Shown piece after piece: positions 42,036-51,164 of a DNA stretch of 64,000 nucleotides. The stretch lies in NCBI GenBank assembly GCA_002104905.1, contig MCFE01000301.1:1-64000 (forward strand), given 5' to 3'. Source of the DNA: Basidiobolus meristosporus CBS 931.73. Taxonomy: Eukaryota > Fungi > Basidiobolomycota. The notes below the pieces were generated by a model, which saw nothing but the letters and a program-made list of their open reading frames with translations, ran no database searches and was not told where the DNA came from. How positions within the stretch are numbered: position 1 is the stretch's first letter; each line of letters opens with the position of its first letter. The position numbers and the translations under genes were made by a program.

Positions 42036-44213
42036 CTAAAACGGCACGTAGTCTAGCGCTGGTCCAACGGATTCTTGTTTGATTAGATTCTGCTGGCGTT
42101 CCAATAGCTCGTTCTCAAGGTCCTGGATACGTCGATTAAGTGCTAGGAATAGGATTGACCTGGGCAGACTAGTTGCTGTTTGCGATAGATCGATGGCCAC
42201 TAATGATGCGAACGGTTTAGCCACATGTCGTTCCAGCTTCGTCGAATATGATGATATCAGATTCATAGTTAAAGTTACTCACCAGAATTCTCGGTCATCC
42301 CACTCAGTCTTCTATTATTGAACCAACCGCGGAGTGCATGTAACGTTAAATCCATACGGTTAGCGAGCTCGATGATCTGTTGGTGGTTGGGATACGGTGT
42401 GAGTTCATAAACTTTTTCCAGCTCCGCCACAACTTCCGGGCCGAATAGTAAGAATCCATCTCTTCGGTTCTCCAATTCGGACTTGCGGTCACGACGACGA
42501 AGCTCCTTGAACCATCGCTCGATATTCTACGGGAAAGAATGTCATTGGATGCATTAATAATAAGCACCTTCGTAGTCACCTCGACAGGACCGCATACCTT
42601 GAATGTCTCATTGTACTGGTCTGCGAGGCCTTGTATCATCTCTCGAGATGGGTATTTCACTTTTTTGTGCATTTCCTCTACAGCCATATGCAGAGGGTCA
42701 TTGTACTCGCCCACTCTGGACTGCCGTTCACGAAACCAGGCATTAATCTTAAGATAATCGATCCCAAGCTGCTCAGCCAACTCTCTACGTTGAATAGAAG
42801 TGGGGTATCCATGGCACTCTTCGTAGAGCTTGCTCATTGCTTCCACAACGTGATCTGGAAACCTGGCCAGCCTGGTAGCTTTCTTGTTTCTAGGCTTGGT
42901 ACTCTTTTCCGTAAGTTGTCTCTTTTCTGGAACAATCTTCGGATGCGGATTCGATGGGTGTTGATAAACATCAATCCCTCTATCTCGATCTTCAGCACGA
43001 CGCTTATAAAACCAGTGCAATACTGACTAATACAGAGATTAGTCCAGTGCACTCTCGTATTCACGCACATGTATGTATTCTACCTTTTCACTTCGTTTCA
43101 AGTGCTCTGCAAGCTCCTTTAACTGCTCAGGGCTAGGAAACGGCGTTTGTTCGTAATAGTCGTGCAGCGTTTGTATTGCTTCCGGAGTATATTTGACTAA
43201 TAAAGGCTTGATCTCGATGCCATTGCTTCTGTCACGATCGCGCCGCTTGGAAAACCAGCGCTTGATTCTCTGAATTCAGCAGCATAGTTAGAATCTTGAA
43301 TCGTTCGCCAACTCAATGCAAACACCAACCCGTAAAGTAACGTTGTTTTCGCTAGCAATTTGCTCCATCACCGGAACTGGTGGGTAGACAGTCTCTGCAT
43401 AGACTTTTTCACACGACTCCTCGAGTTTCTCCAAGTCGCATGCTGGAGCACTGCAAACTACTGGAGAAATGATTTCCGCACCTTTCTGACGTAACTGGTT
43501 TCGTCTATTCGTAAACCACAAGATGATTTTCTGAACACATTCGAGTAGGTTTAGACAGGTGTGTCGGTTTGTAAAACAGATGGGTTGAAGAAATCACATC
43601 CTACCTTTCTATCCACCCCCAGCTTGTGAGCAAGCCGTGTATAGTCTTGTGTTGAATGGTATTTACTCTGTTGGAAGATGGGTTCGAGGTAAAAGGCAAG
43701 AGAGGATTTTTTGCTGGTATCAATGGGTTCGTGATAGGAGGGAGTCAAGTAATCGACGCGTTGTTTGGTTTTTGAGTAATACAGTTTCCAAAAATCTCGC
43801 ACTACTTTCGGGTCTATGTCTATCTCTTTGGCAACCGCCGTCAGTTGCTCGTCAGTGGGGGAAGCGGTGGCCAAAATGAAGGCTCGAATTTTTTCCACCG
43901 CACCAGAACTCAGGTATTTTTCATCGTTCCTAGCGGCCTTCCTTCGTCGGTTTCTGAACCAGCTTCTTGTGGGCTTAAGGAAAAGTCAGTAAGTGACGGT
44001 ACTGTAAACGCAGTGTCGGCCGACTGGTGCATATACCTCCTGTTCTATGGAGCAATCCTCGCAGACCACACTGTATTCATATTGACTGGGGTATGGGTTG
44101 CAACTGTAGTACTCTTCTAGACGTTCCCGTAAATCTCGGTCCAAGTGACGCGTGATGGAGTTTTTGGCAGTTTTTTTTTGTGCTTCGGGGCTGACTTCTG
44201 CTTCAGAAGGCAT
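42036..44213 (-). CDS. multi-homeodomain protein (8 tandem homeodomains + C-terminal coiled coil, ~570 aa)
   Basis: Introns at 43974-44036, 43531-43604, 43270-43329, 43027-43083, 42527-42597 and 42143-42282 give a continuous frame. Helix-3 signatures are WFRNRR, FWKLYY (degenerate), WFTNRR, WFSKRR, WFYKRR, WFRERQ, WFKELR and WFNNRR, most preceded by an (Y/F/S)P-type loop (YH in HD3) and L-x(3)-Y/F helix-1 patterns. Confidence 0.9.
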
Positions 44214-44875
44214 TCTATAATTTGGTTAAAAGAGATATACTCGATCCATTTAATCTATTCCGATTCCTGGAGCACACGTTCCTTTTTTTTCTTTTTTCTA
44301 CCGATTTTTCTGAACATATTTGATGACTGTGATTTGGAACGGGGCGGTCCTAAGCCTCAGGTGTGAATGTGTGCCATGGCAATTCTGTGGAATCGAACAT
44401 AATGCCATCTTACAGGTTCACTTGAGATAAGCTGATGTAGTGGGTGGTTACATGTGTGGAAGATTTAAGTGATTGTTTAGCTGATGCGTTTGATTTCCTT
44501 TGTACTTCATATTACAACTGCTATGCGTTCCAACATTCTGTGGTGGCACGTGGTGATATAATCCAGTACTATTCTAATTATATGCTAGACCGAGCTGGGG
44601 AATCATGTCCCCCCTGCTCTCTCCTTTCATTCTCCCCCTTGTTTGATCCCGGCAAAGCAATCAATATGCCAATTCTACAGCTTCATTGCTGCGCTTTCTG
44701 GTTCCTTTCTATTGCTGGGTTATCCTCCTTCCACGTTCCTAAAACATCCACCTCGTCACCGCATTTTTTGCTTTTGGTTTCCCGCTAAGCATTCTACCCT
44801 CGACTTGTTCAGACTCCACGAAAGCAACGCTTCAGTAATATTCACTGCTTGGTCAGCTGTTCGACATTTATTATC

Positions 44876-45632
44876 ATGCGTGAATATAAATTGGTGGTTC
44901 TTGGCTCTGGTGGTGTTGGTAAATCCGCATTGGTAAGCGTCGGGACCAACTTTTCCTCCGTTGAATACCATGCGGGCCCTGCTGAAGATGGTTTACTTAC
45001 GGCTTATCGTTTGTCAAACACTTATCTAGACCGTCCAATTTGTACAATCAATATTCGTTGAGAAATACGACCCGACTATCGAGGATTCTTACCGAAAGCA
45101 GGTAGAAGTGGACGGACAGCAATGCATGTTGGAGATTTTGGATACTGCTGGTACAGAGCAGTTTACCGCCATGCGAGATCTTTACATGAAGAACGGGCAA
45201 GGCTTTGTGCTGGTTTATTCCATCACCTCTATGGCCACTTTCAATGACTTGGCCGAGCTACGGGAGCAAATTGTTCGAGTAAAAGACACTGAGCAGGTAA
45301 GCCGAATGAGCTACTCTTATCCCAACCACCGTAGCTACCATATTTGGAAGCCACTCGCCACCTATAGTATATCCAATTAATGTAGCTTTTGTGGTTGGAT
45401 CTAGGTTCCTACAGTGCTGGTTGGAAATAAATCCGACCTGGAGGATGATAGATGTGTTTCTCGCGAGGTTGGCGCCGAGTTGACACAACACTGGCCAGGG
45501 GCCACTTTCTTCGAGACATCCGCCCGTAAAAGAATCAATGTTGATGAGGCGATTTTTGACCTGGTGCGACAAATTAACCGCCAAAATCCTGGGCGCTCGG
45601 ATAAGCGTAAAAAGAAGTGCATTATTCTTTAG
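44876..45632 (+). CDS. RAP1: Ras-family GTPase Rap1 (Rsr1/Bud1 orthology group)
   Basis: [73 protein letters not shown], and the CAAX box CIIL. Confidence 0.97.
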
Positions 45633-46050
45633 AGCTCCCCTGGTCCTTGCATCCCCACTTTACCTACCCTCACACCCAGTCATTGGCTTTAGTTTCCATC
45701 CAACTCTTGCCTCATTCCATTCAGTTATATATGCAAAAGAGATCGCACACGTGTCATCAGCCTGTGTGTGAGCCATTAGCCCATTTTGTTTCAGTAGTAT
45801 CAATCTACACTCCACCTCCTATTACTAGCATTTAATGTTTCTTTATATCCGTGTTTCCGGTCTTTAAGATGGGAGGTCGCACAACCATTAATATATGGGT
45901 GAACCATTCTAATAATTCCTTATTTTGCTGTATCATGAGGTTATTTACAATATAACAGTGAGGCCACAAAGCAGCTTACAATATTCCGCGATGATTATCT
46001 AGGATGTATGTTATGAGTCCAAGTAGCGTACCTGACAAGATGGACTCCTG

Positions 46051-48227
46051 CTAATGATAGGCCAAGGTGTCGATCAATTTGTAGTTGCTGATACTGTCAA
46101 GAACCCAATTGGCGAAAACTACTTCGCAAGAGTACTGCTCTCTGTATTTGTTTTTTGTTCGCATCGATGTTTTGTTGTCACATATCACCCGGACCTGTTG
46201 GTTATTCGCAGGAGGCCACCTGTCCAGTACGGTGGCTCCACCCGCATTCAACAGCATTATCAGATCGTCCCGAGCCGGCTGTTTGAACTCACCAGCCAAG
46301 AAATATTGTTGCCCTTGAAACAAGCGAGGTTCCTGCAGCGAAACAGAGCTGTCAATATCGGATCACAGAAGCTAGCCATCTCCATAAGTTACCTGCTTCT
46401 TGATGCTCTGACGAGCACGTCTAGGCCCATAGTTTGAAAAATGTTCATCCCCAATAATCTCGTAGGCATCCTCTTCAAGCCATTCGTTACGCTTGAGCGA
46501 ATCCTCAACCCCTGCTCAAATTAACCTTCATTAGATGCTTATCAAAGAAACACAGACTCGCACGATCGTTACATTGGTAGCTTACAAGCCAGCGTCCATG
46601 CAATATGGCCAAGAAATATTTCATGGTACGCCTGGAGGTCCCTTTGACTAACAAAAAACTCAGTCCCGTCAAGCAAGGAACCCAAATGGATATAGAAATA
46701 CCTGCTTCGGTGACCAAGTGGGTGACATCTTTCTTAAACTCCGCGACGACGGAGGCATGCAACTTCTTCGCGGTGGAGTTCAGCTTTTTCTTGAAAATTA
46801 CACAATGTTAATCCACATCGGTGATGCTTGGCTGACGTTGAGAATAGATTGACATACAGTTTGTGAGGCTTTAAGCATTGTTCCCAAGATGACGGGCATT
46901 TCTGGGGGATCTTGATTTTGGGAGGTTACTTCGGAAGAATCGAATAGGTCTGGTGACGAGCATCTGGTGTCTGAAGGTGATCCTGCCATTGTATCCTGCG
47001 TGTCGTTCTGAAGTATGCTCTTTGGTGATGCTTCATCTATTATTGTTGACTTATCGGTGAGTAAACATATAGAGTAGAAGAAGTTGTCAGAACCTACTAT
47101 TAAGCTCAGCTAGAACAACATCGACATCCGATACTAGCTGCTGCAACAACATAAGATTCTAAACAGATGGTGAATTCAGTAAAGTACAATGCCAATACTC
47201 AATAGCTGTGTATCTGCTCACCTGTGTGGAGGGCTCTACTTGCGATGCATCGATGTCTACTGATAGGCTTGGCTCATATTGCATATGTGCTGCATGATTA
47301 AGATTCTTAGTAAAGCGTGCGATGAGCGCTAGCTACCAAACTTACGAGAGTTGCTGTTTTTTTCTGCAAACAACGATTTATTGGTAAGACGAGGCTGAAT
47401 TTCAGGTGTCAGATTGAAGGACATACCTGATGAGGACATCAAAGCCTTTCTTTTGGAGTTTTCAGCCTTGACCACAACTTTGCTCTTCTTACGTTCTCCC
47501 GATGTAGGCTGGTATATTGACAGTAAGTCAAGTTGAAAAGAAACATATATCTTGAGACACCATCGCTTTGGTACCTGCTCACTGTCTGTCGCATCCAATT
47601 TTGCTTTTCCTTTGTTTTTACCACGCCTCCTTTTTTTGACCGGGCTACATACGCCCCCGTTATCATTCGTATCCTCTTCCTCTTTTGACGGATACGGGTA
47701 TGCTTGAGAAAGGTTGGGGATCGGATCACAATGCCACTCGCTGTGTTGCTTTTCTTGAGAGAGTGCTACATAACATGTTACCTTATTGAAAGCCTCATTG
47801 AAACGGTAAGGTTGACTGCTTACCAGCACCGGTCAGCTCTTCATACGAGTCCAATAATTCTTGGTAGGCTTCGGCCAGTTCCCCGGTATCCTCCATCTTA
47901 TTTAAACCTCTCTTGGTGATCGGGGTCTTGCAAAGTGGACAAGTAGCGAGATTCATTTGAAGTGAATGGTGTATGCACTCTTCGCAAAATAAGTGATTGC
48001 ATTGTGTCGAATAAGGATTACGTAGAATCCCCAAACTAACGCAAAATAAGTGGCCCTGAGTTAACATGCAGCACGTAAACACTATTTTCATTTGGTTCTT
48101 ATGAACACTACCATATAGGACAATTAAGCTCTGCTGCCATTCGGCGCAATATGCCGCTTATTGTTTTTGGGATTTCTTCAGTAAAGATACCCGACTGTGA
48201 GGGCAGGACATCTTGGTCAAGAGACAT
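46051..48227 (-). CDS. BRCA1/BARD1-family protein: N-terminal RING + tandem C-terminal BRCT
   Basis: ILRRMAAELNCPIC/LGILRNPYSTQCNHLFCEECI..CPLCKTPITKRGL. BRCT1 is PVILGTML..AEFKKDVTHLV..RTMKYFLAILHGRWLVSYQW and BRCT2 is FQGQQYFLAGEF..DLIMLLNAGGATV..WVLDSISNY. Confidence 0.88.
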
Positions 48228-48590
48228 TGCATTAACTCTCGAATTGTTTTGGTCTTTCCAGCGTAAATACAAAAACACAATGAACCACGGTTCTTTGACA
48301 AGTGATTCCAACCAATGTAATTATATAACCAAATATTTGGTAAAATCGGTAGCAACAGTCAATGCTCAATACTGTATTCCTGAACTGTGAAGTGCTGCGT
48401 ATTTGAATCAGCCATGTCATGCTAGTAGTAATAAAATGAATGAAAATTCTAGGAAACATCCTCGAATCACGGTTTCATAAAAAAATCCTCTGATTTTTTG
48501 TAATCTCGCGATGCTAATATCACATCAAGTCATAGTAATAGCGTTCACGCTTAATATTTCCCTTGTCTATCAAGAGTATTTCTTGTTGAG

Positions 48591-51164
48591 ATGCCGGGGC
48601 AAAACCTCAGAAGTGCCGACGATAATGTAGAGGGATCCTCTCTGTTCATGATCGTATCCTTTTTTGTTTCGCGTGAACTAATTAGCGTATCGCAACTGCC
48701 TGTTTATATGTTTGTCCCTTAACCGTGTTTTACAGAGCGAGGAGGATATTGCCTATGAGGAAGATCTTCTACGGAACCCCTATACCCTTAAGGGCTGGCA
48801 AAGATATTTGGAGCATAAAAGTAATTCCTCTCTCCAGCATAAGATTTTCATCTACGAAAGAGCGGTCAAAGAGCTTCCTGGCTCCTATAAGCTATGGAAG
48901 GCATATCTAGATCTGAGGCGCTCAATCCTCAAGGGTAAGAATCCAGTGAGCTTTGCTCCCGCGTATGAGAAGGTGAACAATTGTTTTGAGAGAGCTTTGG
49001 TCCTTTTGCACAAGGTACGTCATTATGATGAATCTGCCAACCGATTCGAGTCCTAATGTTCGCTTTGATAACATAGATGCCCCGCATCTGGTTAGATTAT
49101 TGCCATTTCTTGATCAACCAAGGCTATGTCACAAAAACGCGTAGAGTGTTCGATCGTGCCCTTCGTGCCCTCCCAATAACTCAACACGCAAGAGTATGGG
49201 AGCTGTACTTGAGATTTGCCCGTCTGGTTGGTGGTGAAACTGCTTTACGTGTTTACAAGCGCTATCTTCAACTGGAACCCGATCATATCGAAGAATACAT
49301 CGACCTACTCATTTCCATGAAACGCTATGACGAGGCCACCTCTAGGCTTGCTGTGATAGCTAATGACGATAAATTCCAGTCATTGCAAGGAAAGTCGAAG
49401 TACCAACTGTGGATGGAGCTTTGCGACATCGCCTGTAAATACCCAACCGAAATCAAGACACTAAACATCGAGCCTATCATTCGGGACGGAATCAAACGCT
49501 TTACTGATCAGACAGGCAAGCTGTGGAATTCGTTGGCCAGATACTGGATAATGCAGAACCAATTTGAGAAGGCCAGGGACGTTTATGAAGAGGGTATCAA
49601 TGTGGTCATGACTGTCCGTGACTTCACTCAGATCTTTGACGCGTACGCCGAGTTTGAGGAGTCGGTGATTACTTCGAAGATGGAGTTGGTTGCCGAGCGA
49701 GCGGAGGATGGTGAGCAGGATCCAGAGGAGGATTTGGATCTTGATCTAAGACTGATGAGGTTTGAAAAATTGATGGACAGACGGCCATTCCTTGTGAATG
49801 ACGTTCTCCTTCGACAAAACCCCAACAACGTCAACGAATGGGAAAAGCGGGTTGCTTTGTGGAAGGATAACGCTGAGAAGGTGGTTGAGACGTATACAAC
49901 AGCGATCGCTACCATTAATCCAAAGAAGGCTGTCGGCAAGCTTAATCAGCTGTGGGTCAACTTCGCCAAGTTTTACGAGAAGGGTGGCAACTTGGAAACT
50001 GCGCGAGCCGTGTTCGAGAAGGGTGTGCTGGTGAACTTCAAGTCTGTGAATGACCTGGCCGACCTCTGGTGTGAGTATGCCGAGATGGAGCTCCAGCATG
50101 AAAACTTCGACAGAGCAGTTGATATCATGGGCCGAGCCACTGCTCCACCAAAAAACACCAGAGTCAGTTTCCACGACGAGTCAATACCTGTCCAGTCGCG
50201 TGTTTTCAAGGCGCTGAAGCTTTGGTCATTCTATGTCGATCTTGAAGAGAGCATCGGCTCGATTGAATCCACTCGAGCCGTTTACGATCGTATTTTGGAC
50301 TTGAAAATCGCAACGCCACAAATCATCATCAATTATGCCGCCTTCCTGGAAGAAAACAAATACTTTGAAGAGAGCTTCAAGGTGTATGAGCGCGGAGTCG
50401 AGTTGTTCAACTATCCGGTGGCATTTGAAATCTGGAACATCTATCTTTCCAAGTTTCTTTCCCGCTTTGGCGGCTCTAAGCTCGAGCGCGCTAGAGATCT
50501 GTTCGAACAGGCTTTGGAGAAATGCCCGGCCAAATTTGCCAAGCCGCTTTATTTGATGTATGGCAAGCTTGAGGAGGAGCATGGCTTAGCCAAACATGCC
50601 ATGAAGGTCTATGATCGTGCCACCAGAGCGGTCTCTGATGAAGACAGATTCGAGATGTTCAACTTTTACATTGCCAAGGCTAGCGCATCCTTTGGAATCG
50701 CATCCACCAGAGAGATCTACGAACGCTCCATCGAGGTTTTACCAGACCATCACGCCAGAGATATGTGCATGAGATATGCCGAGCTGGAAGTCAAGCTTGG
50801 AGAAATCGACCGTGCCAGGGCCTTGTATGCGTATGGCTCCCAATTCTGCGATCCTCGTGTAAGTGTTTGTGATTTGGGCTTTTTCCCGCGACGTACTGAC
50901 GTTTTTGCACTATAGATCGTACCTACATTCTGGAAGACCTGGGAGACGTTCGAGGTTAATCATGGTAATGAGGATACCTATAAGGAGATGCTCCGCATCA
51001 AGAGAAGTGTCCAAGCACAATACAACACAGAGGTCAACTTTATCTCCGCTCAAATGATTGCCTCTCGCCAACAGCAAAAGCAAGAATCGGCGTCACAAAC
51101 ACCAGCAAACCCTGAAGAGGCAGCTGGGTCTGGTGAGATCGCCATTGATGATATGGATCTTTAG
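48591..51164 (+). CDS. SYF1: pre-mRNA splicing factor Syf1 (XAB2, HAT repeats)
   Basis: [89 protein letters not shown]. Confidence 0.97.

What the first reader, a model, noticed from the sequence alone, without database searches (positions are those of the whole stretch)
46051..48227. Compact BRCA1/BARD1 homolog with a BRCA1-like RING and BARD1-like BRCTs
The RING (ILRRMAAELNCPICL..P.ST.C.H.FC..CPLCK..ITKR.L) closely follows the BRCA1 N-terminus as I recall it. The BRCT pair (PVILGTML..Q.K.L...A..L.A....EF...VTH.V; F.G..(Y/F).L.G.FK....D.LI.L..AGG..(V/I)L.R.P) reads more like BARD1. No ankyrin repeats or PHD are evident in the low-complexity linker. The phosphopeptide-pocket RTxKY motif is kept, but the S-G pair is T-M. 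Yeasts and other well-studied Dikarya lack BRCA1/BARD1, so this may represent a single pre-duplication progenitor that acts as a homodimer.
Basis: partly seen in the sequence, partly recalled or inferred. Interest (0 to 1): 0.72.

Follow-up and report, generated by a model that had tools for sequence, protein, structure and literature searches.

The report
Compact fungal BRCA1-type repair gene
This is a real gene of the fungus Basidiobolus meristosporus for a roughly 500-residue miniature of the breast-cancer protein BRCA1, a type already recorded in early-diverging fungi, and its public gene model wrongly leaves out the catalytic RING finger.

Summary
Window 46051-48227 (minus strand) is one spliced gene of 11 GT-AG exons (517 aa), or 12 exons (496 aa) if a 63-nt in-frame intron is removed. 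It encodes an N-terminal RING with two flanking helices and a C-terminal tandem BRCT pair. There are no ankyrin repeats and no PHD finger.

The genome is Basidiobolus meristosporus CBS 931.73. The public protein ORX91892.1 (432 aa) is exactly the last 432 residues of my model, so it lacks the RING. The syntenic B. ranarum orthologue is already named "Breast cancer 1, early onset" and has both the RING and the BRCTs.

The RING is clearly BRCA1-type. It scores 84 bits to BRCA1, while BARD1's RING is unmatched. The Zn ligands and the equivalents of I26 and K70/R71 are kept. The BRCT pair belongs to the BRCA1/BARD1 clade but is a mosaic: BRCT1 is closer to BRCA1 and BRCT2 closer to BARD1.

Orthologues occur across Mucoromycota and Zoopagomycota. 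BRCA1 in such fungi is already in the literature.

The "single pre-duplication homodimer" idea is neither supported nor excluded. This scan flagged a second RING+BRCT gene elsewhere in this genome (s1-206241), which I could not retrieve. Verdict: new member of a known kind, modest interest.

The parts
46051..48227 (-). Whole coding region of the BRCA1-type gene. Exons: 48227-48112, 48035-47824, 47765-47575, 47508-47346, 47289-47222, 47158-47098, 47036-46858, 46789-46702, 46647-46573, 46511-46393, 46332-46051.
   Evidence: model, all introns GT-AG. (public protein P0001 is exactly the last 432 aa). (the B. ranarum orthologue has the same exon sizes except exon 4).
47828..48170 (-). RING module: N-terminal helix (aa 20-34), C3HC4 RING (aa 36-75, 48122-47927, split by intron 1) and C-terminal helix (aa 88-108). 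The E2-contact Ile38 and the nucleosome-anchor Lys80/Arg81 are kept.
   Evidence: BRCA1 RING 84 bits; hhalign E 8e-21 over 125 columns. (residues). (helices 23-34 and 87-107 at pLDDT 80-92 in the orthologue model).
47683..47727 (-). Invariant fungal motif DPIPNLSQAYPYPSK (consensus EP.PNL[ST]Q.YPYP.K), about 15 residues after the RING C-terminal helix. Function unknown.
   Evidence: P, L, Y-P-Y-P and K are invariant in 8-12 fungal orthologues. Not alignable to BRCA1. Low pLDDT.
47599..47637 (-). Basic run KKRRRGKNKGKAK, a likely nuclear localisation signal.
   Evidence: Also present in B. ranarum (KRRKTKSK). The NLS reading is inference only.
47364..47426 (-). Candidate extra intron of 63 nt (GTATGT...TTTGCAG), in frame and without a stop, lying inside exon 4. 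Removing it gives a 12-exon, 496-aa protein.
   Evidence: it lies at the same place as intron 4 of B. ranarum (62 nt), and the 21 residues it would encode are absent from the orthologue. No RNA data were available to decide.
47032..47349 (-). Most conserved block of the protein (aa 227-272, exons 5-7). It holds SQ/TQ sites and a predicted 22-residue amphipathic helix, TQNLMLLQQLVSDVDVVLAELN.
   Evidence: aa 233-275: 93% identity between the two Basidiobolus species, pN 0.031, with synonymous sites saturated. (helix 229-250 in P0039). (best but non-significant alignment to the BRCA1 coiled coil). (5 S/TQ in aa 230-329).
46054..46899 (-). Tandem BRCT pair (aa 317-517, exons 7-11). Phosphate-pocket equivalents are T323, K369, R366, T367 and F371.
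   Evidence: BRCA1 and BARD1 BRCT pairs at about 120 bits against 61 bits for the next family; hhalign E 4.6e-44. (pocket residues).

Best explanation
This is the Basidiobolus orthologue of the compact BRCA1-type RING-BRCT protein found across early-diverging fungi. Shown: one spliced gene encodes a BRCA1-type RING with both flanking dimerisation helices, a conserved central helix surrounded by SQ/TQ sites, and a BRCA1/BARD1-clade tandem BRCT. Inferred: the RING recruits a UbcH5-type E2 through Ile38. It docks on the nucleosome acidic patch through Lys80/Arg81 and ubiquitylates chromatin, probably the H2A C-terminal tail. The BRCT pair reads phosphoserine or phosphothreonine motifs on repair partners through T323, K369 and R366. 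The SQ/TQ-flanked helix is a regulated partner-binding site. Together these would act in the double-strand-break and homologous-recombination response. The RING most likely dimerises through its four-helix bundle with a second, BARD1-like RING-BRCT paralogue of the same genome. That partner step is the least certain part.
For: Gene model and its agreement with the public protein and the orthologue. Synteny with B. ranarum (SYF1, this gene, a Ras-family GTPase, the homeodomain gene). Purifying selection: pN is 0.09 in the RING, 0.03 in the central block and 0.13 in the BRCTs, against 0.33 in the linker, with pS 0.7-0.87. RING profile: BRCA1 84 bits over residues 10-100. BARD1's RING is not matched at E<=0.01 even within a full-length BARD1 chain. 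hhalign to BRCA1 N-termini gives E 8e-21. All eight Zn ligands and the I26, L63, K65, K70 and R71 equivalents are kept; their roles are taken from PMC8647010. BRCT pair: BRCA1/BARD1 about 120 bits against MCPH1 61 bits; Foldseek TM 0.77-0.85; pocket residues. After the fungal orthologues, the family profile next finds animal BRCA1 isoforms at E about 1e-44. Language-model features rank BRCA1 clusters at 0.94 and 0.91 and BARD1 at 0.87. Database names: 'Breast cancer 1, early onset' for B. ranarum and for Mortierella. Second RING+BRCT gene noted in this genome.
Against: There are no RNA data for this species and no biochemistry. I obtained no BARD1 sequences, so no BRCA1/BARD1 tree was built. 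BRCT2 taken alone is closer to BARD1. G1656 is Met and M1775 is Pro, so peptide specificity may differ. The coiled-coil likeness is not significant. The presumed partner gene was not seen by me. The RING homodimer model passes its controls.
Confidence: 0.7

Rival explanations
1. Pre-duplication progenitor. This would be the only BRCA1/BARD1-type protein that matters in the fungus. It would descend from the ancestor before the BRCA1/BARD1 split and work as a RING homodimer.
For: A canonical E2-binding RING together with BRCTs equidistant from BRCA1 and BARD1, and the BRCT1/BRCT2 mosaic, are what an unsplit or slowly evolving ancestor-like protein would look like. Homodimer model of residues 15-112: the model supports binding but does not show it. 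Score 0.57, best of 3 controls 0.24. The mark was reached by 21 of 30 proteins solved as pairs of one chain and by 0 of 23 solved as single chains (microbes). On eukaryotes it was 17 of 29 and 0 of 30, but only 1 of the 7 with no older solved relative. The runs agree in at least 84% of contacts, and the partner's pLDDT is at least 82. The interface is formed by the two flanking helices. My searches found only one fungal orthogroup.
Against: The scan notes a second RING+tandem-BRCT gene in this genome. Choanoflagellate, animals and plants are each listed with both BRCA1 and BARD1 (PMC3969565 table), which puts the split before fungi unless the duplications were independent. The homodimer pass may be memory of the solved BRCA1-BARD1 and RING1B-BMI1 bundles, and it does not compare homodimer with heterodimer. 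My searches were word-limited and length-limited, so the absence of a paralogue in them means little.
Confidence: 0.15
2. It is the BARD1 orthologue, the non-catalytic partner, rather than BRCA1.
For: The BRCT2 exon scores higher to BARD1 (29.4 bits) than to BRCA1 (20.1 bits). BARD1 chains are among the top BRCT-pair hits.
Against: The BARD1-type RING model PF14835 scores below its cut-off (25.4 against 35 bits). BARD1's RING is unmatched by the family profile, while BRCA1's scores 84-86 bits. The E2-contact Ile and the Lys-Arg anchor are BRCA1 features. There are no ankyrin repeats. BRCT1 is closer to BRCA1.
Confidence: 0.05
3. It is an unrelated RING+BRCT combination from another family (Rad18-like RING, or Rtt107/Brc1, PTIP or MDC1-like BRCTs), or a decaying gene.
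For: Pfam also reports RTT107_BRCT_5 at 6e-8, overlapping BRCT1. Generic RINGs such as RNF4 and RING1B score within 10-25 bits of BRCA1.
Against: RAD18's RING scores 45.6 bits against 84 for BRCA1. MCPH1, PTIP and MDC1 BRCTs score 48-61 bits against about 120; Brc1 scores 19 bits. The reading frame is intact and under strong purifying selection.
Confidence: 0.03

Closest known systems
Human and animal BRCA1 (RING E3 ligase, 1863 aa in human)
   Same: N-terminal C3HC4 RING with both flanking helices. The Zn ligands and the I26, K65, K70 and R71 equivalents are kept. C-terminal tandem BRCT with the R-T-x-K-Y-F pocket helix. An SQ/TQ-rich region with a helix lies just before the BRCTs.
   Different: About 500 aa instead of 1863, with no large exon-11-type central region. 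S1655 is Thr, G1656 is Met and M1775 is Pro. It carries a fungus-specific invariant NLSQ.YPYP.K motif that BRCA1 lacks. Coiled-coil homology is unproven.
BARD1 (BRCA1's obligate RING partner)
   Same: The tandem BRCT is of the same clade. BRCT2, in particular the FK...D.LI.L..AGG stretch, is closer to BARD1.
   Different: BARD1's divergent RING is not matched. There are no ankyrin repeats. The E2-binding residues present here are a BRCA1 feature.
Fungal 'Brca1' of Mucorales and other early-diverging fungi (PMC12818731, PMC11061109; GenBank 'Breast cancer 1, early onset' in B. ranarum and Mortierella)
   Same: Same orthogroup by sequence: Lichtheimia, Umbelopsis, Mortierellaceae, Endogonales and Dimargaris. 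This very gene (JGI Basme2finSC 409078) appears in the homologue table of PMC12818731.
   Different: I could not confirm that the Mucor gene knocked out there (ID 113714) is the RING-BRCT orthologue. The public B. meristosporus model lacks the RING.
Compact BRCA1 homologues: C. elegans BRC-1 (612 aa) and Arabidopsis AtBRCA1/AtBARD1 (RING-PHD-BRCT)
   Same: Short RING...BRCT proteins without the vertebrate central region (lengths and domains as cited in PMC8483008 and PMC11014961).
   Different: The plant proteins carry an extended PHD finger, which is absent here. Both the worm and the plant proteins work with a BARD1 partner. No direct sequence comparison was made here.

Membership tests
BRCA1 | N-terminal C3HC4 RING flanked by two helices that form the dimerisation bundle | tested here: met
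   The profile matches BRCA1 residues 10-100 at 84 bits. hhalign E 8e-21. The model has helices 23-34 and 87-107 at pLDDT 80-92.
BRCA1 | E2-binding and nucleosome-binding RING residues (I26; K70/R71) and all eight Zn ligands | tested here: met
   All are conserved in the window protein (I38, K80, R81) and in nearly all fungal orthologues. Their roles are taken from PMC8647010.
BRCA1 | C-terminal tandem BRCT of the BRCA1/BARD1 clade | tested here: met
   About 120 bits against 61 bits for the next family. hhalign E 4.6e-44. Foldseek TM 0.81-0.85.
BRCA1 | Phosphoserine pocket S1655/G1656/K1702 and +3 pocket R1699/F1704/M1775 | tested here: inconclusive
   T, M and K at the first three positions; R, F and P at the second three. 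Phosphate contacts are plausible. Specificity is unknown.
BRCA1 | PALB2-binding coiled coil and SQ-cluster before the BRCTs | tested here: inconclusive
   A predicted helix, the most conserved block and 5 S/TQ in 100 aa. The alignment to the BRCA1 coiled coil is weak: hhalign E 0.46, shuffle p about 0.01, tested post hoc.
BRCA1 | Heterodimer with BARD1 | not tested
   The partner candidate (scan note s1-206241; possibly JGI 342577) could not be fetched. Only a homodimer model was run.
BRCA1 | Groups with BRCA1 and not BARD1 in RING and BRCT trees | not tested
BARD1 | BARD1-type RING (Pfam PF14835) | tested here: not met
   25.4 bits against a cut-off of 35. The BARD1 RING is absent from profile hits even within a full-length BARD1 chain.
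BARD1 | Ankyrin repeat domain before the BRCTs (animal BARD1) | tested here: not met
   No ankyrin hit in the exons, in P0001 or in P0039.
BARD1 | Tandem BRCT of the BRCA1/BARD1 clade | tested here: met
   117-125 bits. BRCT2 alone is best to BARD1.

The most novel reading that the evidence does not exclude
The fungal mini-BRCA1 is an ancestor-like, self-sufficient E3 ligase. It would homodimerise through its RING helices, need no BARD1, and use the fungus-specific invariant NLSQ.YPYP.K motif and the ultra-conserved SQ/TQ helix as its partner docks. This would place the BRCA1/BARD1 split after fungi diverged from the animal line.
Probability: 0.12. Interest if true: 0.7.

Novelty: new member of a known kind. 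Interest (0 to 1): 0.35.

Why it matters
Model yeasts lack BRCA1 and BARD1, and a 2021 paper (PMC8483008) still states that databases hold no fungal BRCA1. A 500-residue BRCA1 that keeps the RING, the central helix and the BRCTs could serve as a minimal model for BRCA1 ligase and reader functions, because Mucorales relatives are genetically tractable. Settling whether these fungi also have a BARD1 would help date the BRCA1/BARD1 duplication. In practical terms, the public B. meristosporus model (ORX91892.1) should be extended by 85 residues to include the RING.

Tried and rejected
RNA evidence: no sequencing run was listed for this stretch.

Word search with P0001 found only itself and the B. 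ranarum orthologue. The word search restricted to the BRCT region of P0039 found the same two. Neither search produced BARD1 or a second Basidiobolus protein. This says little, given the word and length limits of the tool.

The representative search with the BRCT2 exon gave many spurious hits to bacterial 'GDFNGDGRDD' repeat proteins, which I discarded by eye.

I first read two identifiers in the PMC3969565 orthologue table as chytrid BRCA1 and BARD1. The column header shows they belong to Monosiga, and all five fungi in the table score 0 for both proteins.

The supplement of PMC12818731 lists only BRCT rows, so it could not show whether JGI 342577 has a RING.

Trapp 2011 and Reidt 2006, on plant BRCA1/BARD1 evolution, are not held.

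Coiled-coil homology to BRCA1 was tested three ways and is not significant. The YPYP motif is not alignable to BRCA1.

The findings look-up by sequence came back blank.

The joined 517-aa model was never sent to any search tool. It was used only in local scripts. Single exons, P0001 and P0039 stood in for it.

Full report
WHAT IS THERE. On the minus strand between 48227 (ATG) and 46051 (end of the stop codon), a model of 11 exons gives an uninterrupted 517-codon frame. All ten introns are GT-AG and 54-76 nt long. Exon 1 ends inside the first RING cysteine pair (CPI|C) and exon 2 carries the rest of the RING. The two BRCT repeats are spread over exons 7-11. I searched single exons by reference and used the joined sequence only in local scripts.

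WHOSE GENE, AND IS THE MODEL RIGHT. The representative search with the BRCT2 exon returned a 432-aa protein that is 100% identical to it (P0001). P0001 is ORX91892.1 / K493DRAFT_409078 of Basidiobolus meristosporus CBS 931.73, on contig MCFE01000301.1. It is exactly the last 432 residues of my model.
- The public annotation therefore confirms introns 2-10. It starts at an internal Met86 within exon 2 and so omits the RING.
- The B. ranarum orthologue is P0039 (KAK9729645.1, 'Breast cancer 1, early onset, variant 5', 496 aa). It is 70% identical to P0001 and carries both RING and BRCTs. It matches my N-terminus across the exon 1/2 junction.
- I rebuilt the B. ranarum coding sequence exactly from its locus. 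Its exon sizes are 116, 212, 194, 79+18, 68, 61, 179, 88, 75, 119 and 282 nt. The window's are 116, 212, 191, 163, 68, 61, 179, 88, 75, 119 and 282 nt.
- The one difference is a 63-nt in-frame stretch in the window's exon 4 (47426-47364, GTATGT...TTTGCAG). It lies where B. ranarum has an intron. If it is spliced out, the protein is 496 aa.
- The neighbours are the same in both species: SYF1 (divergent), this gene, a Ras-family GTPase, and the multi-homeodomain gene.
- Between the two species, synonymous sites are saturated (pS 0.70-0.87). Non-synonymous differences are few: exon 1 pN 0.17, RING plus helices 0.094, BRCTs 0.13 and linker 0.33. The RING exons are therefore coding sequence under selection.
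- No RNA run was listed. B. ranarum has five annotated isoforms of this gene, two of which are RING-less or truncated.

WHAT THE DOMAINS ARE.
RING: exon 2 alone matches BRCA1's RING and the helix after it (5e-9).
- A profile of eight fungal N-termini matches BRCA1 residues 10-100 at 84 bits. The best single RING1B domain scores 58-74 bits, TRIM21 68, RNF4 44-45 as a single RING (76.9 summed over a tandem-RING chain), RAD18 45.6 and RNF8 44.
- BARD1's RING is not among the 60 listed hits. It gave no stretch at E<=0.01 even inside a full-length BARD1 chain.
- Pfam's BARD1-type RING model scores below its cut-off (25.4 against 35 bits).
- Profile-profile alignment to animal BRCA1 N-termini gives E 8e-21 over 125 columns.
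- All eight Zn ligands are conserved, as are the equivalents of I26, L63, K65, K70 and R71 (window I38, L73, K75, K80, R81). I26 contacts the E2, and K70/R71 contact the nucleosome acidic patch (PMC8647010).

BRCTs: the family profile scores BRCA1 pairs at 122-125 bits and BARD1 pairs at 117-125 bits. The next families are MCPH1 at 61, PTIP at 51 and MDC1 at 48 bits.
- hhalign to BRCA1 gives E 4.6e-44.
- An AlphaFold model of the orthologue (mean pLDDT 66.8, both domains at about 90) superposes on BRCA1 BRCTs at TM 0.81-0.85 and on BARD1 BRCTs at 0.77-0.80.
- Taken singly, BRCT1 is nearer BRCA1 (52.5 against 42.5-44.9 bits) and BRCT2 nearer BARD1 (29.4 against 20.1 bits). The pair is a mosaic and is not simply 'BARD1-like'.
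- Pocket residues: S1655 is Thr (as in a springtail BRCA1) and G1656 is Met. R1699, T1700, K1702, F1704 and L1839 are kept. M1775 is Pro.
- No ankyrin or PHD domain is found.

THE LINKER IS NOT FEATURELESS.
(i) About 15 residues after the RING's C-terminal helix, every fungal orthologue has EP.PNL[ST]Q.YPYP.K, and Y-P-Y-P..K is invariant. It cannot be aligned to BRCA1 and is modelled with low confidence.
(ii) There is a basic run, KKRRRGKNKGKAK.
(iii) The most conserved block of the whole protein between the two Basidiobolus species is aa 233-275 (93% identity, pN 0.031). It contains SQ and TQ sites and a predicted 22-residue helix. The protein has 9 S/TQ sites against 4.5 expected (p about 0.03), and five of them lie in aa 230-329. 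The helix's best alignment anywhere in a BRCA1 isoform falls on the PALB2-binding coiled coil (NL..LQQ.......VL). The support is weak, however: hhalign E 0.46 and shuffle p about 0.01, tested post hoc. I treat it as a lead only.

HOW WIDESPREAD, AND HOW NEW.
- Orthologues with the same RING-YPYP-BRCT layout occur in Lichtheimia, Umbelopsis, Linnemannia and Mortierella, an Endogonales genome and Dimargaris. After them, the family profile next finds animal BRCA1 isoforms at E about 1e-44.
- Language-model features rank BRCA1 clusters first (0.94 and 0.91), with BARD1 at 0.87.
- GenBank already names the B. ranarum and a Mortierella protein 'Breast cancer 1, early onset'.
- A 2024 survey lists BRCA1 among Fanconi-pathway genes predicted and expressed in early-diverging fungi (PMC11061109).
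- A 2026 paper knocked out a 'brca1' BRCT-domain gene in Mucor and Rhizopus (PMC12818731). This very gene (JGI 409078, in its truncated form) is in that paper's homologue table.
- By contrast, PMC3969565 found neither BRCA1 nor BARD1 in five fungi including a chytrid, and PMC8483008 states that no fungal BRCA1 is known.
- So the family is known but thinly described. This member is new only in having its RING restored.

BRCA1, BARD1 OR PROGENITOR. The RING argues against BARD1. It does not by itself separate 'BRCA1 orthologue' from 'unsplit ancestor', because BARD1's RING is the derived one. Three things bear on the question.
- The scan's index lists a second 'BRCA1/BARD1-type RING plus tandem BRCT' gene of 3126 letters on another contig of this genome (s1-206241). 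I could not fetch it. A 695-aa B. meristosporus protein with a C-terminal BRCT (JGI 342577) is a candidate for it.
- The PMC3969565 table lists both BRCA1 and BARD1 in Monosiga, animals and plants.
- A homodimer model of residues 15-112 passes. The model supports binding but does not show it: score 0.57, best of 3 controls 0.24. The mark was reached by 21 of 30 proteins solved as pairs of one chain and by 0 of 23 solved as single chains. On eukaryotes it was 17 of 29 and 0 of 30, with only 1 of the 7 lacking an older solved relative. The runs agree in at least 84% of contacts, and the partner's pLDDT is at least 82. The interface is the four-helix bundle of the flanking helices. This resembles solved BRCA1-BARD1, so the pass shows that the bundle is intact. 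It does not show that the partner is a second copy of the same protein.

I put the BRCA1-type reading with a separate partner at about 0.7 and the progenitor/homodimer reading at about 0.15.

MECHANISM. Shown: the domain set, the conserved catalytic and docking residues, and selection on the sequence. Inferred:
- The RING dimer recruits a UbcH5-type E2 and sits on the nucleosome acidic patch to ubiquitylate H2A.
- The BRCT pair binds phosphorylated repair factors.
- The SQ/TQ helix and the YPYP motif are further docking sites.
- The basic run directs nuclear import.

NOT DONE. No tree with BARD1 was built. No heterodimer test was run. There is no transcript evidence in this species. No search used the joined model.

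Noticed in passing
window 47970-48227 (minus strand); public protein ORX91892.1: The public B. meristosporus gene model starts at internal Met86 and omits 85 N-terminal residues, including the whole RING. UniProt therefore calls the protein only 'BRCT domain-containing protein'.
   Followed up: yes
window 47364-47426 (minus strand): A 63-nt in-frame, stop-free stretch with GTATGT...TTTGCAG ends lies where B. ranarum has an intron. It is either retained (517 aa, as in the public model) or spliced out (496 aa).
   Followed up: partly
window 47683-47727 (minus strand); alignments A2 and A3: The motif EP.PNL[ST]Q.YPYP.K after the RING is invariant across Mucoromycota and Zoopagomycota orthologues. 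It is more conserved than parts of the RING and has no counterpart in animal BRCA1.
   Followed up: partly
window 42036-50915; L004 1-10332: The gene order SYF1, BRCA1-type gene, Ras-family GTPase, multi-homeodomain gene is conserved between B. meristosporus and B. ranarum.
   Followed up: yes
window 48230-48232 (minus strand): An out-of-frame ATG lies 5 nt upstream of the start codon. It opens a 24-codon reading frame that overlaps the start of the coding sequence.
   Followed up: no
P0014, P0019 (dictyostelids), P0018, P0029: These protist proteins have a BRCA1/BARD1-like C-terminal BRCT pair but no visible RING. They share an N-terminal 'DG[WY]IEYG...LPS.HAW' domain instead. A dictyostelid protein is what PMC3969565 lists as the BRCA1 orthologue of Dictyostelium.
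   Followed up: no
P0010 (Lichtheimia, L003 5001-6588): The Lichtheimia orthologue has lost the BRCT1 phosphate-pocket residues (C, G, G, G, V and S at the S1655, G1656, R1699, T1700, K1702 and F1704 positions) and lacks part of the inter-BRCT linker. This is either a degenerate reader or a faulty gene model.
   Followed up: no
P0118 and P0115-P0117 (B. ranarum isoforms): B. ranarum is annotated with a RING-less 330-aa isoform and with intron-retaining isoforms truncated inside the BRCTs. This raises the possibility of regulated RING-less products.
   Followed up: no
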